Positions 6,327-63,578 of a stretch of 64,000 nucleotides of DNA are shown piece after piece. The notes under the pieces were generated by a model, which saw only the letters and a list, made by a program, of their open reading frames with translations, was not told the DNA's origin and did not search any database. The translations under genes and the position numbers were made by a program. Every line of letters begins with the position of its first letter. Within the stretch, counting starts at the first letter, position 1. The DNA is taken from the IMG/VR virus record IMGVR_UViG_3300027782_000027, positions 176,760-240,759 of that record. One strand, given 5' to 3'.

Positions 6327-6334
6327 TATTTATA
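6327..6334 (+). promoter_or_regulatory. Putative phage late promoter TATTTATA
   Basis: Member of a motif recurring upstream of more than 10 genes. Confidence 0.55.
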
Positions 6335-6362
6335 ATAAACTAAATTAAACTAATATAATAAT

Positions 6363-6782
6363 ATGCCAGCGAATACAGCTCCAATCTTTACACTATTACC
6401 TGAGATTATGTGGGATAATACTATCACAACTGCTAATAATACTGGTGATTTAACTTCAGGTACAGTTTATCCTGTATTTACCGCAGGTACCAATGGTAGT
6501 TATGTGCAAAAAATAAGATTTAGACATACAGGTGCCAATTCGGCGGCAACTGTTGCTCGTGTTTGGATTAATAATGGTTCTGCGACTACTAGTGCAATTA
6601 ATAACACTTTATTTGATGAAATAACAATTGCTGCAAACGCCACATTTACAACGAATGCCGCCTCAACCAACTATGAATTACCACTTATGTTTGGTTTACC
6701 TCCTAATTATAGACTTTATGTAACAATCGGTGCGGCTGCTGCAGGTGGTATTGATGCAACGGTTATAGGAGGAGACTACTAA
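6363..6782 (+). CDS. Hypothetical tail-fibre-associated beta-rich virion protein
   Basis: 139-aa Thr/Ala/Asn-rich ORF directly after the fibre gene. Confidence 0.7.
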   Translation: MPANTAPIFTLLPEIMWDNTITTANNTGDLTSGTVYPVFTAGTNGSYVQKIRFRHTGANSAATVARVWINNGSATTSAINNTLFDEITIAANATFTTNAASTNYELPLMFGLPPNYRLYVTIGAAAAGGIDATVIGGDY

Positions 6783-6967
6783 TGTTAATATACCAATTAA
6801 TACAATTTGACTATGGTTCGCCAGTATCTATGGGATATATGGAAATAGATTGGATGGCAGGACAATGTTTAAGATTAACCGATTTAGACGGTAATACTTT
6901 AGATTTGACAATAAATTTCGGATACCGAGTTGTTGATTCAAACCCTCCAAGACCATCATGGGCTTAA
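6782..6967 (+). CDS. Small hypothetical protein (possible fibre/adhesin connector or chaperone)
   Basis: 61 aa, coupled by a TAATG overlap. Confidence 0.65.
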   Translation: MLIYQLIQFDYGSPVSMGYMEIDWMAGQCLRLTDLDGNTLDLTINFGYRVVDSNPPRPSWA

Positions 6968-6973
6968 AAAATT

Positions 6974-7870
6974 ATGATTGACTATTACAATTTAGCTGAC
7001 AATCAATATAAAAATCAAGTATATACCGGGTCTATAGGTACTAATACTACTTTCATGGTTTATTATTGGATTAAACCAAGAGGTGTTACTATGGTACATA
7101 TTACTGCTATTGGTGCTGGAGGTGGTGGAGGTGGTGGTAATTCTTCTGCGAGTACTGCGGCTTCAGGTGGTTCTGGTGGTGGTTCAGGAGCTATTACAAG
7201 ATTAACAATCCCCGCTATTTTTTTACCCGACCAACTTAGAATAATTGTTGCCGCTGGTGGTTCTGGAGGAACTACAGGTGGAGGTAATACTGCAGCTAAT
7301 ACTTTTGTTGAAGTTGCTAGAGGTTCTGCGGTTGCGGCTACCTATGTGTTACAAGCTAACGGTGGTGGTGGAGGTAACGTAGGTGCTGCGGGAGCAGCTT
7401 CTGCGGGTGGTGGAGCCGGAGCTATAGGTGTTCAAACTAATGCAGTATATCAGGCTTTAGGTACGTTTTCAGTTATTGCAGGTCAAGCGGGTGCTGCAGG
7501 TGCAAATGGTGCCGTAGGGGGTACAATAACAATTAACGGTAATGCTACAACAGTATCAGGAGGTGCCGCTGGAGGTGGGAAAAGTGCAGCTAATACCTCA
7601 TTTGGTGGTGGTAATATCAATCCTATTGGGCAAATACCTACAGGTAATGGAGGAAGCGCGGGTGGAACTAATAATGGTGATACAGGAACTTATACGTTTA
7701 ATGGATTTTATAGTGCAGGAGGTGCTGGTGGAGGTGCTTTTGCAACAGGTACTGCGGGCAGAGGAGGTGATGGTGGACCTGGCAGCGGTGGAGGTGGTGG
7801 TGGTTCAGGAGTAACTGGAGGTAATGGAGGTAATGGTGGACCCGGTATGGTAATAATAACATGTTGGTAA
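6974..7870 (+). CDS. Glycine-rich (polyglycine) adhesin-like protein, paralogue 1
   Basis: WIKPRGVTMVHITAIGAGGGGGGG ... GGNGGPGMVIITCW. Confidence 0.8.
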   Translation: MIDYYNLADNQYKNQVYTGSIGTNTTFMVYYWIKPRGVTMVHITAIGAGGGGGGGNSSASTAASGGSGGGSGAITRLTIPAIFLPDQLRIIVAAGGSGGTTGGGNTAANTFVEVARGSAVAATYVLQANGGGGGNVGAAGAASAGGGAGAIGVQTNAVYQALGTFSVIAGQAGAAGANGAVGGTITINGNATTVSGGAAGGGKSAANTSFGGGNINPIGQIPTGNGGSAGGTNNGDTGTYTFNGFYSAGGAGGGAFATGTAGRGGDGGPGSGGGGGGSGVTGGNGGNGGPGMVIITCW

Positions 7871-7882
7871 TAAGTATAAAAT

Positions 7883-8761: not shown

Positions 8762-8770
8762 TATAATAAT

Positions 8771-9649: not shown

Positions 9650-9658
9650 TTATATAAT

Positions 9659-9925: not shown

Positions 9926-9965
9926 TATATTTCATTTTTAATATTCATAAAAATAAATTTCTTGT

Positions 9966-9973
9966 TATTTATA
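9966..9973 (+). promoter_or_regulatory. Putative late promoter TATTTATA (4 nt before ATG)
   Basis: ttg tTATTTATA tgta ATG. Confidence 0.6.
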
Positions 9974-9977
9974 TGTA

Positions 9978-14985: not shown

Positions 14986-14986
14986 G

Positions 14987-17663: not shown

Positions 17664-17737
17664 ATGATATAAATATAAAAGGGATTAAAACTTTGTGAAG
17701 TTTGACAACAATAAGTTTTTATCTTATTATTAAGGTA

Positions 17738-24050: not shown

Positions 24051-24081
24051 TTTGGTAAATTAAAAAATTGTATTATCTTTG
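24051..24081 (+). promoter_or_regulatory. Bacteroidota-type promoter driving the sigma-factor operon
   Basis: TTTG-N19-TATCTTTG. Confidence 0.75.
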
Positions 24082-24088: not shown

Positions 24089-24643
24089 ATGATTATGAAT
24101 TATATATTATTTGCATTCGGGGAATATAAAGAAAACCCACAGGCCTTAAACCTTTTAACTGAAACGGTATCACAAATATCAAAAGGTGAGATAAAATTCC
24201 AACATGGAGACAGTGGTGTCATAATAACATTTGGCACGAAGTTGGATTGGGAAGATATAGACGACTATATGAAGAAAAATATTGTTAAATTAACAGCAAT
24301 GTATTTTGTTTTCCCTATTGAATCTGACATGATATATTCTATGGACGAAGATATTAAAAAACATTTGTTTGAAAACACTGACATTTTGACAGAAAATGAA
24401 GAATTAAATCAGACTAGATACGTAAGTGATAATACAGGAGTTCCTGAATTTTTTAGGGGTATCCATATTCACAAGGGTAGTCCTTTTGATGATATTCTTA
24501 AAATCCTTAATGAAGAAGTTATTCAAGATGTACCAGTTATGACACTTAATGATTTATTGGATAAGATAAAAGAAAAAGGTATAGATAGTTTGTCAGAAAT
24601 TCAATTAAAACAATTAGAAATTTACTCAAAACAAATAATATGA
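24089..24643 (+). CDS. Hypothetical protein
   Basis: ORF with C-terminal LNDLLDKIKEKGIDSL motif; ATG 24089 lies after the promoter. Confidence 0.7.
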   Translation: MIMNYILFAFGEYKENPQALNLLTETVSQISKGEIKFQHGDSGVIITFGTKLDWEDIDDYMKKNIVKLTAMYFVFPIESDMIYSMDEDIKKHLFENTDILTENEELNQTRYVSDNTGVPEFFRGIHIHKGSPFDDILKILNEEVIQDVPVMTLNDLLDKIKEKGIDSLSEIQLKQLEIYSKQII

Positions 24644-25440
24644 TGGAAAAAAACCAAGTTATCCCGATTAATCAAGACGAAGTACAAATCTACCTTAAAG
24701 AACTCAGACGTATTAAGGTAATGACTCCTGAAAGAGAAAGGGAACTGTCGGCTAAGATGCAAACCCCCGAAACGACTGATAGTGAAAAGGCACGTATCTG
24801 TAAAGAATTGTTAGAGGGTAACCTACGATTTGTTATCACTGTTGCTAAACAGTATCAGGGACAAGGTGTTGATTTCAGTGATTTAGTTGCTGAAGGGAAT
24901 ATCGGACTTATGAAGGCGATTAATAGTTTTGATTGGACAAAGAACCTTCGTTTCATATCGTATGCGGTGTGGTGGATTAGACAATCCATTCTACAGTCTT
25001 TGAATGAACACTCAAGAACAATCCGTATCCCTGTTAACGTTATCCAAGACCTATATAAAGAGAAGAAACGTACAGACAAGACGGGTGAAAGAATTGACGA
25101 TAGATTTGCTAATCTCCCATCAACAATTAACCTACAAACTCAGATTAATGAAGATGGTGATACGTTGATTGATTTAATTGTTAATAAGAATAGTGATATG
25201 CCTGATGAGGCATTTAATAATGGTGACCAACTTAAAGACGGATTGTTTGGTATTATGAATATACTAGATGAACGTGAAAGACAGATTATTGAAGACTATT
25301 ATGGTATCTCAGGTACCCCAAGAACACTTGAAGATATTGGTTCAGATTTCAGTTTAACTAAGGAAAGAGTAAGACAAATTAAGGAAAAAGCTCTTCGTAA
25401 GTTACGAAATGAAAGTGTTACCTTGTTCGATTATATGTAA
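24640..25440 (+). CDS. RNA polymerase sigma70-family factor (RpoD/RpoS-like, no region 1.1)
   Basis: YLKELRR, NLRFVITVAKQY, DLVAEGNIGL, FISYAVWWIRQSI, TLEDIG..LTKERVRQIKEKALRKLR. Confidence 0.95.
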   Translation: MMEKNQVIPINQDEVQIYLKELRRIKVMTPERERELSAKMQTPETTDSEKARICKELLEGNLRFVITVAKQYQGQGVDFSDLVAEGNIGLMKAINSFDWTKNLRFISYAVWWIRQSILQSLNEHSRTIRIPVNVIQDLYKEKKRTDKTGERIDDRFANLPSTINLQTQINEDGDTLIDLIVNKNSDMPDEAFNNGDQLKDGLFGIMNILDERERQIIEDYYGISGTPRTLEDIGSDFSLTKERVRQIKEKALRKLRNESVTLFDYM

Positions 25441-25490
25441 TCAACTATTTATTGTTATAAATTTAATTTTAAATTAGATAAAAAAACATT

Positions 25491-29366: not shown

Positions 29367-29387
29367 ATATTTATATAGTAAAATACA

Positions 29388-41423: not shown

Positions 41424-41424
41424 T

Positions 41425-42144: not shown

Positions 42145-42145
42145 T

Positions 42146-42691: not shown

Positions 42692-43383
42692 TTGATGTTG
42701 ATGTTATTTGTCTTACTAATACAACTTCCGATGAATTATATTGGATGACAAGACGAACATTAACAACTATACACGATTCTGAAAAAGAGTATAAATTTCA
42801 TGTTCACTTAATTGAGACTAATTCCCAAAGTAATTATGATTTTTCAGATATTGTTGAAAATTATGTAAAACCAAATGAAAAATTTAATTACAATAGATTT
42901 TTAAATCATTCTTATCCTTATGTAAAACATAAATGGGTTTTAATTACTAACAATGATGTAAGATATGAAAGAGGTTGGTTTTCAAAGATAATCGAGGTTT
43001 ACAACAAAAGACCTGATGTTGAATCTTTTTCACCTAAATGTCCGATACTTTATTCAAAATATTTTTTTAATGATTTTTTAGGTGGTGATTTAGATTTTCA
43101 TGAAAGTGTTGGGACTAGTGTTCACTTAATGGGTTGGTCATTAGTTATGAAAAAAAGAGTTTTTGACATTGTTTATCCGTGGGATGAAAACTTTGATATG
43201 TACTACCAAGATAATGATTATGCTGAAATTTTATTAAAAAATAATATTAAACACGGTTTGGTTAGGGACTCAATTGCAACTCATTTAGAATCACAAACTA
43301 TAAAATATAAATTTAATTCAAATACAATTGATAATCTTAGAGTGAAAAATTATTTTTACAATAAATGGGGAAAAGAAATTTAA
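42688..43383 (+). CDS. GT2-family glycosyltransferase
   Basis: FNYNRFLN, ITNNDV, WDENFDMYYQDND. Confidence 0.8.
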   Translation: MIDVDVICLTNTTSDELYWMTRRTLTTIHDSEKEYKFHVHLIETNSQSNYDFSDIVENYVKPNEKFNYNRFLNHSYPYVKHKWVLITNNDVRYERGWFSKIIEVYNKRPDVESFSPKCPILYSKYFFNDFLGGDLDFHESVGTSVHLMGWSLVMKKRVFDIVYPWDENFDMYYQDNDYAEILLKNNIKHGLVRDSIATHLESQTIKYKFNSNTIDNLRVKNYFYNKWGKEI

Positions 43384-43384
43384 T

Positions 43385-45673: not shown

Positions 45674-45684
45674 TATTTATAATT

Positions 45685-46071
45685 ATGAGACTTTTAAATT
45701 GTATCAAAAACATAATAAAGGAAGAAAGGATTGGAAAGCTTTTTGGTGACATTAAAGTTAAAGTATCTATTGAAACTTCATCACATGGTAATACCCAAAG
45801 GTTTAGACATGGTAAAGATGAAGTAATTACTAATGATGAAATATTAAGTGTGTTAAACTTAGGTCTACCTGAAATATTAGATGGTATTAAAGAAGGTGAG
45901 TTAGGACAAGACTCATCAATAGTAGTTTCACAAAAAGATTATCCGTTTTTAAATGTTGTTACCAATTTAGAAGAACAGGATTGTTATAATTTCCAAATCA
46001 ATATTGTTACTACCATCCGTAAGAAAAGATTTTACACAACTGGTAAAAACGATTTCCAAATTTACGTATAA
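45685..46071 (+). CDS. Hypothetical late protein
   Basis: TATTTATA at 45674-45681; IKNIIKEE leader. Confidence 0.7.
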   Translation: MRLLNCIKNIIKEERIGKLFGDIKVKVSIETSSHGNTQRFRHGKDEVITNDEILSVLNLGLPEILDGIKEGELGQDSSIVVSQKDYPFLNVVTNLEEQDCYNFQINIVTTIRKKRFYTTGKNDFQIYV

Positions 46072-46108
46072 ATAAAAACCCCCAAAACATCCGATGTAAT
46101 GAGGGTTT
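46072..46108 (-). terminator. Intrinsic terminator (probably bidirectional)
   Basis: Minus strand AAACCCUC-auuacaucggauguuuu-GGGGGUUU-UUAUUU. Confidence 0.75.
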
Positions 46109-46217
46109 CTATCTTTTTCACCTAACGGTTGAGGCTTTTGCCTTTGAACACACCGGGGTTCAATTCCGACTTAATGATTTGGTTGGGTTATTAAGTTGAC
46201 CCCATTCGTTTAACTTG
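46072..46217 (-). ncRNA. Structured small RNA, 6S/6S-Flavo-like candidate
   Basis: TATATTTG promoter (46222-46229, minus), nested stems GGGGUCAA/UUGAACCCC and ACUUAAU/AUUAAGU, intrinsic terminator at 46072-46108; no ORF in the track. Confidence 0.6.
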
Positions 46218-46288
46218 AATACAAATATAAATAGAATATCCTGAATAAAAAAATATATTTTAAACTTTTTTTGATATATCTTTGTCGT

Positions 46289-47289: not shown

Positions 47290-47313
47290 TATATTTATAT
47301 AAAAACTTTAGAA

Positions 47314-52403: not shown

Positions 52404-53030
52404 ATGGGAAAAATTAACACAATTAAAAAGAAAGATATCATACCATTTCATAATGAATTAAACACAGTTGTTGAAGAATATTGTGATAGAGCTTGGGAGT
52501 CTAATGAAGGTGGGAAGAGAAGAAAAATTATGGGAGACCTTGGAGAAGAGATATCTCAAAGAATATTTGAATATTGTATTAATATTTTAAATATTAAAAA
52601 CACGAGAGTTTATAAAGGGTGTGAGAAAAAAATTATGTGTAAAATAGATAATAACGCATATTTTCAGGCTCAAGTTGATAAGCACATTGAAATTAAAAAT
52701 AATTTAAGAATTATTTGCGAAGCTAAAACTTATTTGGATAAAACTTATGTCGAAAGAGCTAGTAGTGATTTTAGTATAATTAGAAAATATAATACGATAG
52801 GTGATAAGAAAATTTTTAGTTATATTATTTCCTTACAAGACTGTGTTAAAAAAGAAACATTATCTTTTTTTATGAGAGATGGTCATATTGATAATGTATT
52901 TATTCTTATGGATTTAAAACGAAATGGAACTAAACCAATATGGAATCCTAATTTTAGAAAAACAATTAATCTTGATAAACTTTATAATTGTATTTATATT
53001 ATAACAAATAACTTATTAGATGGAATCTAA
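52404..53030 (+). CDS. Putative PD-(D/E)XK type II restriction endonuclease
   Basis: GDLGE, QVDKH...ICEAKTYLDK; overlaps an MTase gene; true start ATG 52404. Confidence 0.6.
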   Translation: MGKINTIKKKDIIPFHNELNTVVEEYCDRAWESNEGGKRRKIMGDLGEEISQRIFEYCINILNIKNTRVYKGCEKKIMCKIDNNAYFQAQVDKHIEIKNNLRIICEAKTYLDKTYVERASSDFSIIRKYNTIGDKKIFSYIISLQDCVKKETLSFFMRDGHIDNVFILMDLKRNGTKPIWNPNFRKTINLDKLYNCIYIITNNLLDGI

Positions 53031-55003: not shown

Positions 55004-56116
55004 TTAGAAATAACTATTAAACTCAATATTGAGACATTTTGTAACGTCGCTGAAATCGGGGTAGTCAGGGGTTCTTCCAGAACTCAACCAACTTAAGTCA
55101 CCACTTTCAAATAAACTTTTAAGTAGGTTGATATAACCTCCGTAATAATTTAAATTTTCATATGGGTTATTTACGTTACTTTCAAACCAAAGTTTAATAT
55201 TATAATGTGCAGTTTTTGTAACTTCATATCTTACGCCATATCTTTCTGTTGATGTACTTTTATTGTAATCGTATTTTTTGTATTTATAATCTTCAGCTTT
55301 TTTATTATCAATAACCTCACCGACTAATTGTCCTATAAGTGAGTCATACAATTCGTTAACGTAAACCGACCCATAACAATTTGAGTATAATGAATATAAT
55401 TCACTTCTTATATCTAATCCTAAGTTCATTATAAAGTATTCAACGCAATCATTATCTTGTAAAAGTTTAGTGATTATCTCTTCATTTAATTTTAAATTCG
55501 ACTCATCACCTTGTTCTTTTGCTAAATCTTCTATTAATCCAGGAGTTTCATAACTGATAGATAAATTACCAATTTTAAGTAAATCTTCTTTGATGTATCC
55601 TCTAATTTCTTCTTGGTATTTTGGCTCTAGTTCTTCATAAATATCTTTGAACTCATCACCTGTTACGTCATCATAAAGATAACCATCATAATCCCCATTT
55701 AATATTTCGGCGATTCTGTCTTCACTAATATCGTTTCTACCACTACTAAAGAATTGTGCCAGTTCACCGGAATCTTGTAAATCAACATAATATTTCCCAT
55801 CAATCTCAGTTATATCTGAAAATTCCATTTCCATCATCTTATAGATGTAATTTGGGTCTTTTTGTATAAATTGATAAATTATTTTATTTTGATAATCAGA
55901 CCAATCATTATTAAAAGGGTCAATGTAATGTGATAAATTATATTTAATTATTAACTCAAAAAATTTATCAAAACTACCTATGGTGTTTTCAATATCCTCC
56001 TCAGTAACATCTCCGTTTTGGAATAGAGTAATAAGTTTTACTAACTTATTTTGGAAACCTGTTAATACGGGTTTTTCCTCTTCTTCGTTTAATTTTTTGA
56101 AAATTTTAAATTCCAT
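55004..56116 (-). CDS. Acidic late protein
   Basis: TATTTATA at 56120-56127 (minus); KKLNEEEE leader. Confidence 0.75.
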   Translation of the reverse strand: MEFKIFKKLNEEEEKPVLTGFQNKLVKLITLFQNGDVTEEDIENTIGSFDKFFELIIKYNLSHYIDPFNNDWSDYQNKIIYQFIQKDPNYIYKMMEMEFSDITEIDGKYYVDLQDSGELAQFFSSGRNDISEDRIAEILNGDYDGYLYDDVTGDEFKDIYEELEPKYQEEIRGYIKEDLLKIGNLSISYETPGLIEDLAKEQGDESNLKLNEEIITKLLQDNDCVEYFIMNLGLDIRSELYSLYSNCYGSVYVNELYDSLIGQLVGEVIDNKKAEDYKYKKYDYNKSTSTERYGVRYEVTKTAHYNIKLWFESNVNNPYENLNYYGGYINLLKSLFESGDLSWLSSGRTPDYPDFSDVTKCLNIEFNSYF

Positions 56117-56128
56117 AATTATAAATAT

Positions 56129-56154
56129 AAAAAAAGAGGAAAAATTCCCCTTTT
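56129..56154 (-). terminator. Intrinsic terminator after the micropeptide operon
   Basis: Minus strand AAAAGGGGAA-UUU-UUCCUCUUUUUU. Confidence 0.75.
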
Positions 56155-56178
56155 AGTTTTCTTATGTTGCGGGAAAGA

Positions 56179-56220
56179 TTATTTTCCACATCCGCAACCA
56201 CCACCGTTGTTGTTCTTCAT
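56179..56220 (-). CDS. 13-aa micropeptide MKNNNGGGCGCGK
   Basis: ATG..TAA between a 41-aa GCGC ORF and a terminator, with an A-rich leader. Confidence 0.5.
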   Translation of the reverse strand: MKNNNGGGCGCGK

Positions 56221-56244
56221 CGTTTTTAATTTATTAGAGGTTTA

Positions 56245-56370
56245 TTACTTTTTCTTGTTTTTGTTGTAGTACTTATCAATAGTACTCTGAACTGCGTTTT
56301 TAATACTCTCAGTTCTTAACTTTTTCACCTGTTCAGGTGAAGCATTTTGTTTTTTACATCCACATCCCAT
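56245..56370 (-). CDS. 41-aa basic peptide starting MGCGCKK
   Basis: MGCGCKKQNASPEQVKKLRTESIKNAVQSTIDKYYNKNKKK; TATTTATA at 56387-56394 (minus). Confidence 0.7.
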   Translation of the reverse strand: MGCGCKKQNASPEQVKKLRTESIKNAVQSTIDKYYNKNKKK

Positions 56371-56460
56371 ATTGTTGGTATTTTATTATAAATATTTACC
56401 ACATGTGATTTAATAGTAAATAATATAGTTATTTTAATATTTATTAATATAATTTTTATC

Positions 56461-57759
56461 ATGAGAGTTAATATAGATATATCACAAATACAAAAGGTTG
56501 TTCAGATGTTGGTTGAGGAAGAAGGACAAGAGAGTGTTGTTATAACACCTGAGCAATATATTGACTTATTAAAGTTTACTGACTATAACGGTAAATTGGT
56601 TCAAAATATGAAACAATTCAGAGGTAAAAGGATTGTTATTGATGGTAATTTAAGTCTGAGAGGAACGGATGCCAACAATATCACAAATATCACAGTTAAT
56701 GGTGGTTTAGATTTAACATATACCAAAATTAATTCTATTGAGGGGATTGAAGCCAAATCTATTTCAACATATGGTACACCATATGAACAAATTCAAATCA
56801 AAAAACAAAGACAGATTGAATTTGAAAAACAAAACGTTTTACGACAAGAGGATGAGTGGAATTTAGAAACTGCAACTAGTGAGATTGCGATTTTGGCAAA
56901 TGTTTTATTTGAATTTTTGACTTCATCTTCTGGTGATTATGAGGCTAAAGAACCTAATCATGATGCAAGGTTACAGGAACTTTATACTGCAAAAGAAAGA
57001 ATGGAGGAAATTGAGAAAGAAACAGAAGATAATGAAAATCTGATGGATTTAGAAGCGGTTGAAGAAGAAATTGAAGAACTTGAAAAAAGAATTGACTTAT
57101 ATAATTTGGTTTATGATTACAAATATTATAGTATGAGAACTTTTTATTTGTTAACTGACGAATTAGAAGAATCAAAAGAAAGATGGGCGGTTGGTGATAA
57201 TTATAGAACCCACATGTCGGCATATGAAAGAATTGATGAATTGATTGATGATATCGGAATAAAAGGTTTTAATTCAAGTTTTGTTGAAGATTATATTGAT
57301 ATTGAAGAACTTAAGGAAACTTTTAGAGACGATGAAGAAAATAATGTTAGAGAAAACCTTGAAGACTTTTTTGACGAGGAAGATTTTGAATATTCAGACC
57401 CAGCAGTTCAAGAAAGAATTGATGAAATTGAATTGTTTTTGGAAGATTCTGAAATAGACCAAGAAAAAGAAGATGAATTAAATGAAGAACTTGATGAGTT
57501 AAGAGATAGTGATAAAACTGTCCCTGAAAATTTAATTGAGGAAAAGGTTGAAGATTTAATTAATGATTTGGTTGATGACCCTGCGAACGTAATTGAAGAA
57601 TATGGTTTGAATATTGAAAACTTTATAGATATAAAAGGTTTTAAAGAAGGGTTAGTTGAAACTGACGGTATTGGTCACACACTGAACTCTTACGATGGTG
57701 ATTACGATACTATTGAATTTAATGATGAAACATATTACATTTTACAAATAGAAGGGTAA
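56461..57759 (+). CDS. Highly acidic late protein with short LRR-like N-terminal region
   Basis: GNLSLRGT/GGLDLTYTKI; D/E-rich C-terminal half; TATTTAT at 56438. Confidence 0.75.
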   Translation: MRVNIDISQIQKVVQMLVEEEGQESVVITPEQYIDLLKFTDYNGKLVQNMKQFRGKRIVIDGNLSLRGTDANNITNITVNGGLDLTYTKINSIEGIEAKSISTYGTPYEQIQIKKQRQIEFEKQNVLRQEDEWNLETATSEIAILANVLFEFLTSSSGDYEAKEPNHDARLQELYTAKERMEEIEKETEDNENLMDLEAVEEEIEELEKRIDLYNLVYDYKYYSMRTFYLLTDELEESKERWAVGDNYRTHMSAYERIDELIDDIGIKGFNSSFVEDYIDIEELKETFRDDEENNVRENLEDFFDEEDFEYSDPAVQERIDEIELFLEDSEIDQEKEDELNEELDELRDSDKTVPENLIEEKVEDLINDLVDDPANVIEEYGLNIENFIDIKGFKEGLVETDGIGHTLNSYDGDYDTIEFNDETYYILQIEG

Positions 57760-57760
57760 A

Positions 57761-58522
57761 ATGGAAACAAAACCAAAAAGAAGAAAATTAAAAAAAGACA
57801 ATCATTTTAAGTTATCAACAGATTGGTTGTTAACAGAACCAGTTGACTACGAACATAAGTATTATATGTTGATGGACTTCTTAAATTTCTGTGACGATAA
57901 AATTGAAAAGTTTGAGTTGTATCCGTTATTCAGTGAAATGTCGTTACACTTAGCAAATCTACAAACGATATCTTCAGAGTTCAAATACATCATTGTTAAC
58001 AAAAAATTTGAAGTCATTGACGATGAAATATTAATCAATGAACTTAAATTTACACCAATCCCAAAGTTAGGTGATGATGAGTTAGAAGAACTAAATAAAA
58101 TTCTAAAATATGCTGGACCGAAGTTTTTTGAATACTTTAATGTCATCAAAGCTCTTTGGACATTAACATACGACTCGGTTTCAATCAAACATACCAACGA
58201 GAATAAAAATCAGAGTTTAGAAACAGGATATTTTTTTACACTTAAGGGTAACAACAAAAGGATTTGGAAGTATGTGGCAGGTGATGTTAACACGGTTAAA
58301 CACGACAGTAAATTTGCGGTTCAGTTGATATTTGATGGTGAAAGTAAAAAGGTTATCAAAACAATATTAAATGAATTAACCCAAGATATAAGTCTACCTA
58401 TATTTGAATTAATGTCATCCAACGACTTACCATTTGAGAATACACTCCTACCAATCTTTAAAAGAAAGGTATTAAGTTACATAGTTCAGAAAAAAACAAT
58501 TGTTAATCTAAAAAAAAATTAA
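57761..58522 (+). CDS. Hypothetical protein
   Basis: WLLTEPVDYEHKYYML. Confidence 0.7.
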   Translation: METKPKRRKLKKDNHFKLSTDWLLTEPVDYEHKYYMLMDFLNFCDDKIEKFELYPLFSEMSLHLANLQTISSEFKYIIVNKKFEVIDDEILINELKFTPIPKLGDDELEELNKILKYAGPKFFEYFNVIKALWTLTYDSVSIKHTNENKNQSLETGYFFTLKGNNKRIWKYVAGDVNTVKHDSKFAVQLIFDGESKKVIKTILNELTQDISLPIFELMSSNDLPFENTLLPIFKRKVLSYIVQKKTIVNLKKN

Positions 58523-58534
58523 TACTTTTGTAAT

Positions 58535-58696
58535 ATGGGGTTCAACAAAAAGATTGTAGGAGAATTACAAATACATGAAATAGAAATGAACCCCGAAAAT
58601 ATTAAGTATTATCTTAACGCTGATGCTATATTATTTTCATCTAAAGAAATTGAAATTAAATTTAAAGAATATGAGAAACAATATAGACCTGAATGA
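58535..58696 (+). CDS. Small hypothetical protein; missing from ORF track
   Basis: MGFNKKIVGELQ...QYRPE; TTG-N20-TACTTTTG promoter 4 nt upstream. Confidence 0.65.
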   Translation: MGFNKKIVGELQIHEIEMNPENIKYYLNADAILFSSKEIEIKFKEYEKQYRPE

Positions 58697-58871
58697 AGTT
58701 CTGTTAAGAAAACTTGAAAAACCAGTTCATATCAATTACATTTGTGATTATATCCTACGAGTTGGAATCGACGAAACAAGAAAACGAATTGAAAAACTTG
58801 TAAGTGAGGGTATACTTGAAGAAAGTAAATATGGAAAAGAATATTATGTCAGAGCAAAAAGAAATGGTTAA
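58671..58871 (+). CDS. Small winged-helix-like protein
   Basis: ETRKRIEKLVSEGILEE..YYV; ATG 58671 preferred. Confidence 0.55.
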   Translation: MRNNIDLNEVLLRKLEKPVHINYICDYILRVGIDETRKRIEKLVSEGILEESKYGKEYYVRAKRNG

Positions 58872-59076
58872 TCACCCATCACATTATGGTGGTGAAGATA
58901 ATCCATATGAAGCAATCAAAGTCATTGATGAGTGGAATTTAGGATTTTGTCTTGGGAATACAGTTAAATATATCTCAAGAGCGGGTAAAAAAAATAAAGA
59001 AAAAGAATTGGAAGATTTAGAAAAAGCTCTGTGGTATCTACAATATTATGTAAATCAAAAAAAATATGAAAAGTAA
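58846..59076 (+). CDS. DUF3310 family protein
   Basis: VNHPSHY, GFCLGNTVKYISRAGKK, EDLEKALWYL. Confidence 0.85.
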   Translation: MSEQKEMVNHPSHYGGEDNPYEAIKVIDEWNLGFCLGNTVKYISRAGKKNKEKELEDLEKALWYLQYYVNQKKYEK

Positions 59077-59941
59077 AATTACTGTTATTGGTATATCATC
59101 TGATAACATTGAAAATGTATTTAATGGTTGGGAATATACTTACATAGTTAAAGATTTATTAGCGAATTTTGAAGTTGACCTAAAGTTAATTTCAGATAAA
59201 TTAGATTTGTTTTGTGACAATTGTTTAATAATTTATTCATGTGATGAAAGAAATATTCCTGATAATTTACTTGAATATTTTACTGAGTATAAAAATAGAA
59301 ATCTTGATTTTAATCTTTTTCACATATCAAACGAACAACTAAGACATGATACAAGTTATTATAAATTGGCTAAAAATGTTTTTAGAAATTATTTTGACCC
59401 GTCAATAACTTTAAATAATGTTTTAACTTTACCTTTAGGTTATAAAAATGGGTTTTTTAATCCGAGTTTAACATTTAAAAAAATTGAAGATAAAAAATTT
59501 GATAGTTGTTTTGTTGGACAATTAAAACACGATAGAATTAATGTTGTTCACGAAATTAGTAATTTAGATAAAAAATTTATACACATTACACAACAATGGG
59601 ATTGTCCAACATCTCTCCCTTCGGAAGCAGTTTTTAAGATTTATCAAGATACTCTTTTAATTCCGTGTCCAATTGGTAATGTTAATCAAGACTCGTTCAG
59701 AATTTGTGAGATTTTGGAATCCGGCTCAATACCTTTAATTAAAATTTATTTCCAAGAAGATTATTTTAAACATATTTTTGGAGAACACCCAATACCAACT
59801 GTTAGAGATTGGAATGAAATACCTAAAATATTAAAAGATATTAAAAATAATAGTAACGAAAAAATTTTAGAAATTAATGAGTGGTATAAAAAATTCAAAG
59901 AAGAACTAAGAACTAAAATTTTTAATATATTAAATAAATGA
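59066..59941 (+). CDS. Exostosin/GT47-like glycosyltransferase
   Basis: LPLGY, FVGQ, PCPIGNVNQDSFRICEILESGSIP. Confidence 0.65.
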   Translation: MKSKITVIGISSDNIENVFNGWEYTYIVKDLLANFEVDLKLISDKLDLFCDNCLIIYSCDERNIPDNLLEYFTEYKNRNLDFNLFHISNEQLRHDTSYYKLAKNVFRNYFDPSITLNNVLTLPLGYKNGFFNPSLTFKKIEDKKFDSCFVGQLKHDRINVVHEISNLDKKFIHITQQWDCPTSLPSEAVFKIYQDTLLIPCPIGNVNQDSFRICEILESGSIPLIKIYFQEDYFKHIFGEHPIPTVRDWNEIPKILKDIKNNSNEKILEINEWYKKFKEELRTKIFNILNK

Positions 59942-60795
59942 TAGAAAATTATATTAACAAAGTCCTTAATGGTGATACCATTGACGTGATGAGCGAAATG
60001 CCCGAAGGATGGGTTGACCTAGTTGTTACATCGCCTCCATATAATGTGGGTATCCAATACGACACACATAACGATGAGATTGTTATGGATGAATATTGGG
60101 AGTGGTCTGAAAAATGGTTGACAGAAGTATACCGTCTACTTAAAGACGATGGAAGAATTGCTATTAACATACCATATGAGGTGAATGTACAAGCCCGTGG
60201 TGGTAGAGTATTCTTCGCTTCAGAAATATATCAGGTGATGAAAAAAGTTGGGTTTAAGTTCTACGGTATTGTTGACCTTGAAGAAGACTCACCACATAGA
60301 AGTAAGACAACTGCTTGGGGTTCTTGGATGAGTCCATCATCTCCTTACATTTACAACCCAAAAGAATGTGTCATCTTGGCTTATAAAAAAGTTCACATCA
60401 AGAAAGTTAAGGGTGAACCACAATGGAAAGGTGAACCTTATCTAACTGAAGAGGGGAAGAACAAAGTTGCTTATTCTGAACAAGATAAGAAAGAGTTTAT
60501 GGAATTGGTGTTTGGACAATGGAAATACTTTGCCGATACCCGTTCATTAACAAAGGCGACGTTCTCCATGGATATTCCCGAAAAGGCAATCAAGATATTG
60601 TCATACAGAAATGATGTGGTATTAGACCCCTTTAATGGTTCAGGTACCAGTTGTGTGGCAGCAGTTGTTCATGACAGACGATGGGTTGGTATTGAATTAA
60701 GTGAAAACTATTGTGAAATTGCTAAACAACGAATACAAAGTTTTGTTGACCAAAAGAGCCAACAGAAGTTACAATTTGAAAACGGAGTCCAATAA
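59938..60795 (+). CDS. N4-C/N6-A DNA methyltransferase (beta class)
   Basis: VTSPPYN, VLDPFNGSGTS, VGIEL. Confidence 0.9.
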   Translation: MIENYINKVLNGDTIDVMSEMPEGWVDLVVTSPPYNVGIQYDTHNDEIVMDEYWEWSEKWLTEVYRLLKDDGRIAINIPYEVNVQARGGRVFFASEIYQVMKKVGFKFYGIVDLEEDSPHRSKTTAWGSWMSPSSPYIYNPKECVILAYKKVHIKKVKGEPQWKGEPYLTEEGKNKVAYSEQDKKEFMELVFGQWKYFADTRSLTKATFSMDIPEKAIKILSYRNDVVLDPFNGSGTSCVAAVVHDRRWVGIELSENYCEIAKQRIQSFVDQKSQQKLQFENGVQ

Positions 60796-60808
60796 ACTCC
60801 GTTTTTTT
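60779..60808 (+). terminator. Intrinsic terminator
   Basis: aaaacggagt-ccaataa-actccgtttt-ttt. Confidence 0.85.
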
Positions 60809-60840
60809 ATTTATTTGTATATTTATAATTAAATGTTATT

Positions 60841-61212
60841 ATGAAAAATTCGGAAGTTGTTAAATTTTTACTAGAAACACAAACTCAGTTTAGAATACTA
60901 CACTGGCAAACAAAATCATTCTCAAGACATGAGGCTTATGGGCGTATTTATGATTCACTTGATGATTTGATTGATAAGTTTGTTGAAGTTTGTATGGGTA
61001 AACACGGAAGACCTAGTTTTACAGGCGGTTATACATTAGCGGGTAGAGATATTGAAGAACTTGAGTTAACTGAGTTTATTAATTTAGTATGTGAATACTT
61101 GGTGGGATTGTCTGAAAGCTACGACCCAAAGATGGACTCAGATTTATTAAACATTAGAGACGAAATGTTAGCGGAAATTAACCAGTTGAAATACTTGTTA
61201 ACTTTAAAATAG
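60841..61212 (+). CDS. Ferritin/Dps-like four-helix protein
   Basis: LHWQT..HEAYG..D..D..VE; NIRDEM..LKYLLTLK; TATTTATA at 60820. Confidence 0.75.
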   Translation: MKNSEVVKFLLETQTQFRILHWQTKSFSRHEAYGRIYDSLDDLIDKFVEVCMGKHGRPSFTGGYTLAGRDIEELELTEFINLVCEYLVGLSESYDPKMDSDLLNIRDEMLAEINQLKYLLTLK

Positions 61213-61234
61213 AGGTATATTACTTTTTTACTTT

Positions 61235-61267
61235 AAAAGGTTCATCGTAATGATGAACTTTTTTTTT
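61235..61267 (+). terminator. Intrinsic terminator
   Basis: aaaaggttcatc-gtaat-gatgaactttt followed by a T-run. Confidence 0.85.
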
Positions 61268-61286
61268 GTTATAATATTTATTATTA

Positions 61287-62687
61287 ATGAAAAAGATAAT
61301 TTCTGAAGGTGGTATTAGAAACATAAAAGAACTTTCTAATAGATACAGCAAAGCGAAGATATACTTTCACCAAGATTTAGATGGTGTTGCAACTGCATTA
61401 GCAATGAAAAAGTATTTGGAAGACAATGGAATTAAAGTTGTTGATGTTGAAGTAATCCAATACGGAGATAAAGAATTTGCGGTTAAGAAGGCGGATGCTG
61501 AAGGTGAAATTATGCCAGTTCTTGTTGACTTTGCTCACGGAAAACCAATGTTCGTAGTTCACACCGACCACCACGATAGACAAGCCGGAGCTGACGAAAC
61601 TAAATCAACTCAGTTCAGAGGAGCTCGTTCTAATGTTGAAACACTTTCACAGATTGTTCCGGCATCTGAAATTTTTACACCGGAAGATGTTGCGACAATA
61701 TCTATGGTTGATAGTGCTGATTATGCTTCTAAAAACATTACACCTGAAATGGTAATGAATTATGTATACGGAACGTCAAAAGAAAAAAGTGCTAAAGAAA
61801 ATAGAATGTTATTAGGTTTGGTTACTAACAAGTTATTGTTGGCGTTTAAGAACAAACCCGGATTTTTAGAGACATTAGTGTTAGATTGTAAACCTTCAAT
61901 CCTTTCAATCTTTAATAAGATAAAAGAGTTGATGAAGACAAATAGATATGCTGACATATCTTCATTAGAAAAAAACAAAGAAGATTATGTTCAGACAATG
62001 AAAGGACATAAGAATGTTCAGGTTAAAGATAATATCATTGTTCAATACGGTGGTGGAAGTATGATGAAACCTGGCTCATATGATAGATATACCCCATTTA
62101 GAAACAACCCTGAGGCAGACTTTCTTGTAATTGCTTGGCCACTTGGTTTATTACAGGCATCGTGTAACCCTTTTAAAAAAGAAAGAGAACTTAAAGGTGT
62201 TAACTTGGGAGAAATTGCTCAAGAAGTATTGGGACATTGGGAATCACAATTAAAAGAAAAACAAGTTCCACTATCAACAATTAAATGGGTTTCTGAAACT
62301 GCTGCAAAAGAAGAATCAGTTGGATTTACCTTTAAGGATTTTGCTGCAATATACGGAGACAAGTACTTGGATGAGAAAGATGGTGTTAAAACACTTATGG
62401 ATATTAAATCTTTGATGGAAAAGAAATCAACTGAACTGACTGAAGAAGAATGGAGTGTTTTAGATGGTGTTACTGTCCCTGTATGGGAAGTTATTCAAGC
62501 AAATTCAGGTGGACACAAGTGTATTACAAATGTATCTGGTTTAAACTATATTGGAAGAAGTAAAAGACCACCACAAGGTAAGTACAAGTACGACTCTGAA
62601 AAAGATGATTCACCTTATATTAAATTCTTAAAGATGTTACAGAATAAATTTGTAAATGTCTTACAAGAAAAGATTAATCAAAAATGA
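61287..62687 (+). CDS. DHH-like phosphoesterase
   Basis: YFHQDLDG, LVDFA, TDHHD, SGGH; TATTTAT at 61275. Confidence 0.7.
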   Translation: MKKIISEGGIRNIKELSNRYSKAKIYFHQDLDGVATALAMKKYLEDNGIKVVDVEVIQYGDKEFAVKKADAEGEIMPVLVDFAHGKPMFVVHTDHHDRQAGADETKSTQFRGARSNVETLSQIVPASEIFTPEDVATISMVDSADYASKNITPEMVMNYVYGTSKEKSAKENRMLLGLVTNKLLLAFKNKPGFLETLVLDCKPSILSIFNKIKELMKTNRYADISSLEKNKEDYVQTMKGHKNVQVKDNIIVQYGGGSMMKPGSYDRYTPFRNNPEADFLVIAWPLGLLQASCNPFKKERELKGVNLGEIAQEVLGHWESQLKEKQVPLSTIKWVSETAAKEESVGFTFKDFAAIYGDKYLDEKDGVKTLMDIKSLMEKKSTELTEEEWSVLDGVTVPVWEVIQANSGGHKCITNVSGLNYIGRSKRPPQGKYKYDSEKDDSPYIKFLKMLQNKFVNVLQEKINQK

Positions 62688-63172
62688 GAATAGTTGAAGA
62701 AATTAGTAAGATAAAAAAATTAATGTTTGAAAATCAAACTAATTTTAATTTTGGATATCAAGGGGACATTGGAGAGAAACCAGGGTTACATATCTACATA
62801 TCTGATGACGAAAAAATTGGACATTCTAATTTACTTAATTTTTATGATTCTTGGGATTTTGATATGGATGTAGAAAGATTTTATAATAATCCACAATATT
62901 GTGTTGATGGTTGTGATGACGGATTCTTCAACCAAAAAAATACAGTATATCTACATGACTTAAAAGTTTCCCCAAAATATCAAGGTAATGGGTATAGTAA
63001 GTTACTAATGAATAAATCACATGAAATTGCTAAAAATCTAGGATTTGATTATGTTAGTTTGATTACATCTAGAAATAATGAACCCGCTCAAAATTTGTAT
63101 AAAAAATTAGGTTATAAATTACACCAAACTGATGATAATAAAGATTTTTATTATTATAATTTAAACAAATGA
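62684..63172 (+). CDS. GNAT acetyltransferase
   Basis: LKVSPKYQGNGYSKLL, NEPAQNLYKKLGY. Confidence 0.85.
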   Translation: MRIVEEISKIKKLMFENQTNFNFGYQGDIGEKPGLHIYISDDEKIGHSNLLNFYDSWDFDMDVERFYNNPQYCVDGCDDGFFNQKNTVYLHDLKVSPKYQGNGYSKLLMNKSHEIAKNLGFDYVSLITSRNNEPAQNLYKKLGYKLHQTDDNKDFYYYNLNK

Positions 63173-63199
63173 AACAAAGTGATGGAATAATTGTGAAAG
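63169..63199 (+). repeat. 31-bp direct repeat of the Nudix 5' end (dead-end 16-codon remnant)
   Basis: atgaaacaaagtgatggaataattgtgaaag versus atgaaacaaagtgctggaattattgtgaaag at 63579-63609. Confidence 0.85.
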
Positions 63200-63204
63200 A
63201 AAGG

Positions 63205-63558
63205 TTAAACTTTAATTAAGAACTTACAAACATCACCCTCTTCAATATTTTCATCTTTACAACGACCACCTTCTATTTCTAAAACATAGGTTCCTGAACC
63301 TTCATAACTTTGACAAAGTTCAAATTCACAGGGTTCACAGTTGTGGTGTATTTTTGTTATTTTATGGTTTTTATCTATAAAGATGATATCCAAAGGAATA
63401 ATACAGTTCAACATCCAAAAACTGTGTTCACCTTTACCCATAAAAAATAACATACCATCAAATCCAATAAACTCCCGACCCATCATTCCTCTTTTAGTTT
63501 CAGATTTGGTTTTACAAACTTTGACTTTAAATATTTCTTTATTTATTGTTACAAACAT
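63205..63558 (-). CDS. DUF192 family protein
   Basis: GMMGRE..GMLF..SFWMLNCIIPLDIIFID..YVLEIEGG. Confidence 0.85.
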   Translation of the reverse strand: MFVTINKEIFKVKVCKTKSETKRGMMGREFIGFDGMLFFMGKGEHSFWMLNCIIPLDIIFIDKNHKITKIHHNCEPCEFELCQSYEGSGTYVLEIEGGRCKDENIEEGDVCKFLIKV

Positions 63559-63578
63559 AGTTATATATAAATAGTATT

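What the first reader, a model, noticed from the sequence alone, without database searches (positions are those of the whole stretch)
6327..63573. Second promoter class TATTTATA producing near-leaderless late transcripts
Seen: TATTTAT(A) lies upstream of genes at 6327, 9966, 25446, 29368, 45674, 47292, 56438, 60820 and 61275 (+) and at 17668, 56120, 56387 and 63566 (-). In five cases it is only 3-4 nt before the ATG. It is the reverse complement of the T4 late box TATAAATA, yet it aligns with the host -7 element TAnnTTTG. Inference: a -7 variant read by a phage sigma factor (24640 or one outside the window), marking structural and packaged genes.
Basis: partly seen in the sequence, partly recalled or inferred. 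Interest (0 to 1): 0.6.

Follow-up and report, generated by a model that had tools for sequence, protein, structure and literature searches.

The report
Phage-specific TATTTAT promoter class
An uncultured 240-kb freshwater phage that probably infects Bacteroidota carries about 80 copies of a conserved TATTTAT(A) box just upstream of its genes; this looks like the phage's own main promoter, set so close to the start codons that many mRNAs would have almost no leader, and it is probably read with the phage's own sigma factor.

Summary
All 13 sites exist, and five lie 3-4 nt before an ATG.

**Enrichment.** Raw window counts are not enriched (18 vs 12.2). Upstream of genes the motif is strongly enriched: 11/76 window genes vs about 2.3 expected, and 66/276 genome-wide vs 9-18 expected (z 12-20).

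**Behaviour (called P2 here).** The box is sense-oriented. A conserved A or AAA lies 4-5 nt downstream, fixed to the box rather than to the ATG. It lacks the host -33 TTG, is avoided inside genes on both strands, and is almost absent before tightly coupled genes.

**Conservation.** It is invariant upstream of terminase in 37 distinct relatives. Among orthologue pairs with a 294-kb relative, 37 of the 50 P2-headed genes keep it, although the flanks are only 40-60% identical.

**A second class, P1.** This is the canonical Bacteroidota -33 TTTG / -7 TAnnTTTG promoter. It heads the stable RNA genes and the operon holding the only sigma gene (window 24640-25440).

**Reading.** Host sigmaA transcribes P1, which supplies the phage sigma, which then reads P2. 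The sigma-P2 link is inferred, because no RNA data exist. P2 is not restricted to late or structural genes: it also heads a helicase/ribonucleotide-reductase operon, the unit ending in DNA polymerase, and dozens of small ORFs. This is a new variant of a known kind.

The parts
6327..6334 (+). P2 box TATTTATA, directly after the stop codon of the 4766-aa ORF; ATG at 6363 (28 nt downstream)
9966..9973 (+). P2 box TATTTATA; ATG of the 694-aa SprB-repeat protein 4 nt downstream (9978). The G001 orthologue keeps a P2 box at 4 nt.
17668..17675 (-). P2 box TATTTATA; ATG at 17663, 4 nt downstream. Conserved in G001 at 3 nt.
24051..24081 (+). P1 host-type promoter: TTTG (24051-24054), 19-nt spacer, TATCTTTG (24074-24081). 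ATG at 24089 opens the two-gene operon (184-aa ORF, then sigma).
   Evidence: P1 is also present in G001 and G002
24089..24643 (+). 184-aa ORF co-transcribed with the sigma gene. Weak DUF6576-like C-terminus; function unknown.
24640..25440 (+). Phage sigma factor, 266 aa. Regions 1.2, 2 and 4 are present; region 3.0/3.1 is truncated. A paralogue of Bacteroidota sigmaA.
25446..25453 (+). P2 box TATTTATT, 6 nt after the sigma stop codon; ATG at 25491 (37 nt). Conserved in G001 at 33 nt.
29368..29375 (+). P2 box TATTTATA; ATG at 29388 (12 nt). Conserved in G001 at 14 nt.
45674..45681 (+). P2 box TATTTATA; ATG at 45685 (3 nt)
47292..47299 (+). P2 box TATTTATA followed by taaaaa; ATG at 47314 (14 nt), LRR protein. 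Conserved in G001 at 18 nt.
52991..52998 (+). Additional candidate P2 box TATTTATA; ATG at 53020 (21 nt). It lies inside the 3' end of the upstream ORF, so it is a weaker candidate.
56120..56127 (-). P2 box TATTTATA, preceded by a hairpin and T-run; ATG at 56116 (3 nt), 370-aa ORF
56387..56394 (-). P2 box TATTTATA; a 41-codon ORF starts at 56370 (16 nt)
56438..56445 (+). P2 box TATTTATT; ATG at 56461 (15 nt). Conserved in G001 at 13 nt.
60808..60827 (+). Tandem P2 boxes TATTTATT (60808) and TATTTATA (60820), directly after a hairpin and T-run terminator; ATG at 60841. Conserved in G001 at 12 nt.
61275..61282 (+). P2 box TATTTATT after a hairpin and T-run; ATG at 61287 (4 nt). Absent in G001, where the gene overlaps the upstream gene.
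63540..63547 (+). Additional candidate P2 box TATTTATT; ATG at 63579 (31 nt). Divergent partner of the box at 63566.
63566..63573 (-). P2 box TATTTATA; ATG at 63558 (7 nt). Conserved in G001 at 7 nt.

Best explanation
TATTTAT(A/T), called P2 here, is the core -10-like element of the phage's own major promoter class.

**Proposed mechanism**
- The box occupies about -12 to -5.
- It needs no -33/-35 element.
- Transcription starts at an A 3-5 nt downstream.
- The resulting mRNAs are either leaderless or nearly so (0-3 nt leader; 44 of 77 promoter-proximal genes) or carry a 7-14-nt leader beginning AAA.

**Proposed cascade**
1. Host RNA polymerase with host sigmaA reads about 25-35 canonical Bacteroidota promoters (P1: TTTG, 19-20 nt spacer, TAnnTTTG).
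2. One of these P1 promoters drives the operon that encodes the phage's single sigma factor (window 24640-25440).
3. That sigma replaces host sigmaA on the host core enzyme and reads P2.
4. P2 heads essentially all other transcription units: structural, lysis, replication and many small genes.

**Shown by sequence statistics and comparison**
- The motif is real, oriented, positioned and self-sufficient.
- It is conserved and distinct from P1.
- A single sigma gene exists.
- A P1 promoter precedes the sigma operon.

**Inferred, not shown**
- That P2 is a promoter at all, since no transcripts were seen.
- The transcription start position.
For: **Enrichment and orientation**
- TATTTAT is the top 7-mer upstream of genes: 79 sense vs 35 antisense.
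- 66 of 276 genes carry it within 30 nt, vs 8.6-17.6 expected (z 12-20).

**Anatomy**
- The logo is a-TATTTAT-wwww-A. The A at +11 is present in 82% of sites.
- In the long-leader class, AAA at +11 to +13 is present in 91-94%. It is fixed relative to the box while its distance to the ATG varies.
- The commonest distance from the 8-mer end to the ATG is 4 nt for both P1 and P2. This matches the host box at -12 to -5 (PMC9723704).

**Class separation from P1**
- TTG lies 19-20 nt upstream in 15 of 37 P1 sites but 2 of 77 P2 sites.
- TTTG lies there in 9 of 37 P1 sites and 0 of 77 P2 sites.

**A DNA-level, self-sufficient signal**
- TATTTAT and its reverse complement are the 2nd and 3rd most depleted of 42 same-composition 7-mers inside coding sequence (observed/expected 0.66 and 0.68).
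- TAnnTTTG is not depleted there.

**Marks the starts of transcription units**
- It precedes 2 of 109 tightly coupled same-strand genes, vs 27 of 50 with a 12-39 nt gap and 20 of 53 with a gap of 40 nt or more.
- A terminator-like hairpin lies upstream of 11 of 77 P2 sites vs 6 of 199 other genes.

**Conservation**
- The box is invariant upstream of terminase in 37 distinct relatives (77-100% amino-acid identity). Meanwhile the terminator stem, the spacer and even the leader class change.
- The complete relative G001 shows the same top 7-mer and the same two-peaked spacing.
- Among 154 orthologue pairs: both P2 in 37, P2 lost in 12, P2 gained in 8, switched to P1 in 1 (odds ratio 34, p = 5e-17). 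Flanking identity is only 40-60%.

**Cascade**
- There is one sigma70-family gene in G000 and one in the complete G001, and no beta or beta' domains.
- A P1 promoter precedes the sigma operon in G000, G001 and G002.
- The tRNA-Arg and tmRNA genes sit behind P1 boxes.
- The sigma differs from Bacteroidota sigmaA mainly in region 1.2 and by a region 3 deletion. By general sigma70 structural knowledge, region 1.2 contacts the downstream part of the -10 element and the discriminator. Those are the positions where P2 differs from the host box.
Against: - There is no transcript evidence of any kind. All 24 public runs holding this DNA are DNA metagenomes.
- The phage sigma keeps the host-type recognition helices. 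Region 2.3-2.4 (FISYAVWWIRQSILQ) is identical to Bacteroidota sigmaA, and region 4.2 is nearly identical. A new specificity is therefore not obvious, and an intact region 4.2 fits poorly with promoters that lack a -33 element.
- By homology the sigma could just as well read P1-type promoters.
- P2 also heads replication genes and dozens of small ORFs. If the cascade is right it is a two-step scheme (early vs everything else), not a 'late' class.
- Cryptic transcription factors or a non-canonical polymerase among the many unannotated ORFs cannot be excluded.
Confidence: 0.55

Rival explanations
1. P2 is a promoter read by the host sigmaA holoenzyme, either unaided or after remodelling by unidentified phage proteins in the manner of T4 AsiA/MotA. 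The phage sigma would then do something else, for example keep P1-type transcription going after host sigmaA is inactivated.
For: - P2 shares TA at the first two positions and the same register as the host -7 box.
- The phage sigma has the same region 2.4 helix and nearly the same 4.2 helix as Bacteroidota sigmaA, so it is predicted to like host-type promoters.
- Many early-looking small ORFs carry P2.
Against: - P2 departs from the host consensus at two of its conserved positions (T to A, and G to A/T). It lacks the -33 TTG in 75 of 77 cases.
- P1 and P2 almost never interconvert between orthologues: 1 of 154 pairs.
- The 7-mer alone is avoided inside genes while TAnnTTTG is not. This implies a reader with different requirements from sigmaA.
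- No AsiA- or MotA-like gene was identified, although most ORFs are unannotated.
Confidence: 0.22
2. P2 is read by a phage-encoded non-canonical RNA polymerase, possibly virion-packaged or crAss/N4/phiKZ-like, hidden among the giant unannotated ORFs.
For: - The genome has several very large ORFs without annotation: 1611, 1863, 2065 and 4766 aa.
- Some jumbo phages and some Bacteroidota phages are known to encode their own polymerases (general knowledge).
- P2 has no -35-type element.
Against: - No beta or beta' domain was found in G000 or in the complete G001.
- The three large ORFs tested (1611, 1863 and 2065 aa) gave no PHROG hit and no PDB sequence hit.
- The T7-type RNA polymerase family gave no hit, but its control genomes did not ring either, so that search is uninformative.
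- The box has the position and TA start of a sigma70-type -10 element.
Confidence: 0.1
3. The motif is not a promoter. It is an RNA-level signal (an AU-rich translation enhancer or processing site for Shine-Dalgarno-less Bacteroidota translation), or simply AT-rich intergenic composition.
For: - Bacteroidota mRNAs lack Shine-Dalgarno sequences and use A-rich leaders (PMC6847099, listed).
- The motif lies close to start codons.
- Whole-window counts are at chance level.
Against: - Enrichment is z 12-20 against AT-matched Markov models.
- The conserved AAA is fixed to the box, not to the ATG.
- Distance to the ATG has two peaks and reaches 34 nt, conserved at the sheath gene.
- The motif is absent before 107 of 109 tightly coupled genes.
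- It is depleted on both strands inside genes; an RNA signal should be avoided only on the sense strand.
- It is invariant in diverged orthologous spacers.
Confidence: 0.04

Closest known systems
Bacteroidota sigmaA promoters (-33 TTTG / -7 TAnnTTTG)
   Same: - Same register: an 8-mer at about -12 to -5 starting with TA.
- The start codon or predicted start lies 4 nt after the box.
- The phage itself uses this canonical type (P1) for its sigma operon, tRNA, tmRNA and about 25-35 other units.
   Different: - P2 reads TATTTAT(A/T): A instead of T at the sixth position, and A/T instead of the conserved G at the eighth.
- The two 'n' positions are fixed as TT.
- There is no -33 TTG (2 of 77 vs 15 of 37 in P1).
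- Leaderless spacing occurs in more than half of P2 genes, against 5.5% leaderless mRNAs in Flavobacterium psychrophilum (PMC9723704).
T4 late promoters (TATAAATA at -10, read by gp55 with gp33 and the gp45 clamp)
   Same: - An AT-only 8-mer at about -13 to -6.
- No -35 element.
- A phage-specified sigma is the presumed reader.
- It heads structural genes.
- The two sequences are exact reverse complements.
   Different: - On the non-template strand the box reads TATTTATA, not TATAAATA (sense 79 vs antisense 35 genes).
- No gp55 homologue is found.
- The phage sigma is a full sigmaA-like protein with region 4, not a minimal region-2 factor.
- The class is not confined to late genes.
Phage sigma cascades of the SPO1 (gp28, gp33/34) and phiEco32/7-11 (gp36) type
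   Same: - Early genes, including the phage sigma gene, use host-type promoters.
- The phage sigma then redirects the host core enzyme to promoters with a different consensus.
- (Known from the literature, my own knowledge; related papers are listed.)
   Different: - Here the sigma is a close paralogue of the host primary sigma: 40-46% identity, with identical 2.4 and near-identical 4.2 helices.
- Only one phage class is visible, rather than separate middle and late classes.
- The promoters are placed to give leaderless mRNAs.
- Nothing has been tested biochemically.

Membership tests
Bacteroidota sigmaA-type promoter | -7 box TAnnTTTG at -12 to -5 | tested here: not met
   P2 is TATTTAT(A/T). 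Positions 6 and 8 differ from the consensus in all sites by definition (logo). P1 sites in the same genome do meet this feature.
Bacteroidota sigmaA-type promoter | -33 element TTTG/TTG about 19-20 nt upstream of the -7 box | tested here: not met
   TTG at 19-20 nt: 2 of 77 P2 sites vs 15 of 37 P1 sites. TTTG: 0 of 77 vs 9 of 37.
T4-type late promoter | TATAAATA on the non-template strand upstream of the gene | tested here: not met
   The sense strand reads TATTTATA. TATTTAT is sense-oriented before 79 genes, and its complement before 35.
T4-type late promoter | A gp55-family sigma is encoded | tested here: not met
   phmmer of T4 gp55 against all six-frame ORFs of G000 and G001 gave no hit at E <= 10. 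This is a sequence-level search only.
T4-type late promoter | No -35 element | tested here: met
   No conserved position lies upstream of -1 in the logos.
Phage sigma-factor cascade | The phage encodes a sigma70-family factor | tested here: met
   Pfam Sigma70_r1_2, r2 and r4 all score above their cut-offs. PHROG_351 at 2e-51. A single copy is found in G000 and in the complete G001.
Phage sigma-factor cascade | The sigma gene is expressed from a host-type (early) promoter | tested here: met
   TTTG, 19 nt, TATCTTTG at 24051-24081 upstream of the two-gene operon. P1 is also present in G001 and G002. This is sequence-level evidence only.
Phage sigma-factor cascade | The phage sigma holoenzyme initiates specifically at the new promoter class | not testable with these tools
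   This needs in vitro transcription or in vivo reporters. There are no RNA runs.
Leaderless mRNA | The primary 5' end lies at, or within 1-3 nt of, the start codon | not testable with these tools
   Inferred only. The 8-mer end lies 2-7 nt from the ATG in 44 of 77 P2 genes. The host box-to-start distance is 4 nt (PMC9723704).

The most novel reading that the evidence does not exclude
A large family of uncultured freshwater jumbo phages (561 terminase relatives in IMG/VR) carries a paralogue of the host primary sigmaA with region 3 deleted. The proposal is that this sigma initiates without any -33 contact at a 7-bp box placed so that transcription begins on the start codon itself. Most phage messages would then be leaderless, in a phylum where leaderless mRNAs are rare (about 5%). 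That would amount to a phage-specific coupling of transcription and translation that separates phage from host gene expression.
Probability: 0.3. Interest if true: 0.65.

Novelty: new variant of a known kind. Interest (0 to 1): 0.5.

Why it matters
- **Transcription map.** It gives a sequence-level map of transcription (about 80 P2 and 25-35 P1 promoters) for an abundant, uncultured family of lake jumbo phages. Almost nothing else in these genomes can be annotated.
- **Natural experiment.** If the sigma link holds, it shows how a few changes to Bacteroidota sigmaA (region 1.2, loss of region 3.0/3.1) could retarget the -7 box and remove the need for the -33 element.
- **Tool potential.** A compact, self-sufficient 7-bp promoter paired with a single small sigma could become an orthogonal expression tool for Bacteroidota.
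- **Leaderless translation.** The high share of predicted leaderless genes makes leaderless translation in Bacteroidota directly testable.

Tried and rejected
- **RNA evidence.** The look-up of sequencing runs returned 24 DNA metagenomes from 21 studies and no RNA run.
- **Population variation.** Read laying on 55900-61400 used contigs only. A variant contig with 77 differences in 1.47 kb leaves the three boxes at 56120, 56387 and 56438 unchanged. About 1.3 changes were expected there, so this says nothing.
- **Host identification.** Searching bacterial genomes with the FtsH-like protease gave about 45% identity across many phyla, which is uninformative.
- **Distant sigma-bearing phage.** LR756500.1 (sigma 33% identical) shows no TATTTAT enrichment in 40 kb. 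Its recognition helices differ, so this neither supports nor refutes the sigma link.
- **Cryptic polymerase.** PHROG scans and PDB sequence searches of the large ORFs found nothing. The PF00940 search is uninformative because its controls did not ring.
- **T4 gp55.** No homologue was found.
- **Function of P1-driven proteins.** Pfam and PHROG scans found almost nothing: one DUF932 protein, and otherwise only weak or function-unknown family hits.
- **A third promoter motif.** None is obvious among the 50 genes that have an upstream gap but neither box.
- **Leader length as a temporal marker.** Rejected as a split between middle and late genes. Both the short-leader and long-leader classes include structural genes, and terminase orthologues switch class.
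- **T4-box reading on the opposite strand.** Rejected by orientation.
- **Literature.** No paper links TATTTATA to a phage promoter.

Full report
**Context**

The window is the last 64 kb of a 240,759-bp linear IMG/VR viral contig with 32% GC and a CheckV completeness estimate of 82%.
- The same DNA is held by 24 freshwater or lake DNA metagenomes from 21 studies. None is an RNA run.
- Protein scans identify a tailed phage. Found were terminase large subunit, portal, major head protein, tail sheath, baseplate wedge, family-B-like DNA polymerase, DnaB helicase, ribonucleotide reductase, SbcC and many glycosyltransferases.
- The contig also carries a tRNA-Arg and a tmRNA gene.
- Terminase has 561 relatives in IMG/VR.
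- One relative, G001, is 293,850 bp and rated 100% complete. I fetched it whole for comparison.

**Checking the observation**

Five lie 3-4 nt before the ATG.
- Counted over the whole window the word is at chance level: TATTTATA 18 vs 12.2 +/- 3.5, and TATTTAT 44 vs 41.3.
- That is misleading, because the word is concentrated upstream of genes and depleted inside them.
- In the 30 nt before window genes it occurs 11 times in 76, vs 2.2-2.5 expected from Markov models trained on those same AT-rich regions.
- Genome-wide it occurs 66 times in 276, vs 8.6-17.6 expected (z 12-20).
- Without any prior, TATTTAT is the commonest 7-mer upstream of genes, and ATATTTAT and TATTTATA are the commonest 8-mers. 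Orientation bias is strong: 79 genes sense vs 35 antisense.

**Anatomy of the box (P2)**

- Aligned on the box, the logo is a-TATTTAT-(a/t)-www-A. Nothing is conserved further upstream.
- The distance from the 8-mer end to the start codon has two peaks: 2-7 nt (44 genes) and 10-18 nt (33 genes).
- In the long class, positions +11 to +13 are AAA in 91-94% of sites. They are fixed relative to the box while their distance to the ATG varies. This marks the likely initiation point.
- In the short class, the A of the ATG occupies that place.
- In Flavobacterium psychrophilum the sigmaA box TAnnTTTG lies at -12 to -5, and only 5.5% of mRNAs are leaderless (PMC9723704).
- The phage's own host-type boxes and the P2 boxes share the same commonest distance to the ATG, 4 nt.

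**Two classes**

- The genome also holds about 25-35 canonical Bacteroidota promoters (P1), typically TAT(A/C)TTTGta.
- In P1, TTG lies 19-20 nt upstream in 15 of 37 sites. In P2 it does so in 2 of 77. TTTG lies there in 9 of 37 P1 sites and 0 of 77 P2 sites.
- P1 precedes the tRNA-Arg, the tmRNA, an FtsH-like protease, a DUF932 protein and several small unknown ORFs.
- P1 also precedes the operon holding the sigma gene: TTTG at 24051, a 19-nt spacer, TATCTTTG at 24074, and ATG at 24089.

**Evidence that P2 is a functional DNA signal marking transcription-unit starts**

1. *Avoidance inside genes.* Inside coding sequence, TATTTAT and its reverse complement are the 2nd and 3rd most depleted of 42 same-composition words against synonymous-codon shuffles (0.66 and 0.68). 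The most depleted word is the P1 core TATATTT. TAnnTTTG as a whole is not depleted. Avoidance on both strands fits a self-sufficient DNA element rather than an RNA signal.
2. *Position in operons.* P2 precedes 2 of 109 genes tightly coupled to an upstream same-strand gene. It precedes 27 of 50 genes with a 12-39 nt gap and 20 of 53 with a larger gap.
3. *Terminators.* Hairpin-plus-T-run terminators lie just upstream more often than for other genes: 11 of 77 vs 6 of 199. Window examples are at 56120(-), 60808/60820 and 61275.
4. *Terminase orthologues.* Upstream of terminase in 37 distinct relatives (77-100% protein identity) the box is invariant. The terminator stem changes with compensating substitutions, the spacer changes, and the leader switches between the short and the AAA class.
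5. *Whole-genome comparison.* G001 shows the same top 7-mer (97 of 376 genes vs 40 antisense) and the same two spacing peaks. Among 154 orthologue pairs (median 61% identity), P2 is kept in 37, lost in 12, gained in 8 and exchanged for P1 once (odds ratio 34, p = 5e-17). Positions flanking the box are only 40-60% identical. Eight of the 13 window sites are conserved in G001.

**Which genes carry P2**

- Structural and packaging genes: terminase (4 nt), portal (7 nt), the operon ending in the major head protein, the tail sheath (34 nt, conserved), the gene before the baseplate wedge, and an adaptor-like gene.
- Other genes: two endolysin-like genes, the SprB-repeat and LRR proteins in the window, the DnaB-helicase/ribonucleotide-reductase operon, the unit ending in DNA polymerase, and dozens of small ORFs in the first 72 kb.
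- Short-leader and long-leader sites do not separate by function.
- P2 is therefore the phage's general non-host promoter class, not a late or structural marker.

**Who reads it**

- ORF 24640-25440 is a 266-aa sigma70-family protein with regions 1.2, 2 and 4. It is RpoD/RpoS-like but falls below every equivalog cut-off.
- Its nearest clusters in the ESM Atlas are mostly viral proteins of the same length.
- It is the only sigma detected in G000 and in the complete G001. Neither genome has beta or beta' domains.
- No gp55 homologue exists.
- The three large unannotated ORFs tested (1611, 1863 and 2065 aa) match no PHROG family and no solved structure by sequence.
- Aligned with five Bacteroidota sigmaA proteins (40-46% identity):
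  - the phage protein has the same short architecture without region 1.1;
  - region 2.3-2.4 (FISYAVWWIRQSILQ) is identical;
  - region 4.2 is nearly identical (KERVRQIKEKA vs RERVRQIKEKA);
  - region 1.2 is divergent and carries a 6-residue insertion;
  - about 35 residues of region 3.0/3.1 are deleted.
- This supports a Bacteroidota host and shows that the sigma is a paralogue of the host primary sigma.
  - In favour: the retained 2.4 helix fits the retained TA at the start of the box. The changed region 1.2 fits the changed downstream half. That reasoning rests on general sigma70 structural knowledge, not on a test here.
  - Against: an intact 4.2 helix fits poorly with promoters that lack a -33 element, and by homology the protein could also read P1.

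**Conclusion on mechanism**

- The most economical scheme is: host sigmaA reads P1, P1 supplies the phage sigma, and the phage sigma reads P2. I give it about 0.55.
- Taken separately, I put the promoter nature of P2 at about 0.85, and a start 3-5 nt downstream at about 0.7.
- Rivals:
  - host holoenzyme, unaided or remodelled by unknown phage proteins (0.22);
  - a hidden phage polymerase (0.1);
  - an RNA-level or compositional artefact (0.04).

**Comparison with known systems**

- P2 works like the sigma-dependent, -35-less promoters of T4 (late) and like the SPO1 or phiEco32-type sigma cascades.
- It fails the membership tests for a T4 late box: the strand is wrong and there is no gp55.
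- It also fails the tests for a Bacteroidota sigmaA promoter: the box differs and there is no -33 element.
- I found no paper that reports this box.
- It is a new variant of a known kind.
- Its points of interest are the host-like sigma paralogue, the self-sufficiency of a 7-bp box, and the predicted abundance of leaderless messages in a phylum where they are rare.

Noticed in passing
window 46070-46229 (- strand): A P1-type box TATATTTG at 46222-46229(-) is followed by about 130 nt with no ORF. That stretch folds well (-41.2 kcal/mol, z -2.8) and ends in a strong two-way terminator hairpin near 46070-46115. There is no Rfam or tRNA hit, although the + strand has a T-loop-like GGTTCAATTCC at about 46157. 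It may be a phage small RNA.
   Followed up: partly
L012:11205-11279 (+) and L012:14464-14856 (-), i.e. genome 47205-47279 and 50464-50856: The phage encodes a tRNA-Arg(TCT) and a tmRNA (tag AKLSTLGLIRTEEVSVA). Each lies behind a host-type P1 box: TATATTTG 12 nt before the tRNA, and TATCTTTG 21 nt before the tmRNA.
   Followed up: partly
window 1-6326 (genome 168785-183085): This is the 3' end of a 4766-aa ORF. It has 45-48% GC against 32% for the genome and is open in several frames, which suggests a repetitive giant protein. A P2 box starts on the base right after its stop codon.
   Followed up: no
window 34550-45517: A run of multi-domain glycosyltransferase, FkbM-methyltransferase and DegT-aminotransferase genes. 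More glycosyltransferases lie elsewhere in the genome. This looks like a large sugar-modification module.
   Followed up: no
L010:2500-9700 (genome 2.5-9.7 kb): A family of paralogous genes of about 110 aa in alternating orientation. Each has its own nearly identical P2 promoter (aactaaTATTTATatataATGAAATA...).
   Followed up: no
L011:17339-17421 and L011:18712-18791 (genome about 35.34-35.42 and 36.71-36.79 kb): Two duplicated divergent intergenic regions hold a P1 promoter on the minus strand and a P2 box on the plus strand. The two overlap back to back: the P2 box lies beside the -33 TTTG of P1. This could act as a class switch.
   Followed up: no
L010:15640-16540 and L011:2840-2890 (genome 15.6-20.9 kb): A C-rich element (ccccctacccccttttttg) recurs four times immediately upstream of P2 boxes. 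It is unusual in a genome with 32% GC.
   Followed up: no
window 58844-59027 and 60132-60683: In four lake metagenomes these two short stretches attract 5-20 times more contig depth than their surroundings. The contigs involved are diverged. The stretches are probably parts of genes shared with many other phages or organisms.
   Followed up: no
window 24089-24643: The 184-aa ORF co-transcribed with the sigma gene is conserved in G001 (about 30% identity). Its only hit is a weak DUF6576-like C-terminus. It is a candidate sigma partner or anti-sigma, untested.
   Followed up: no
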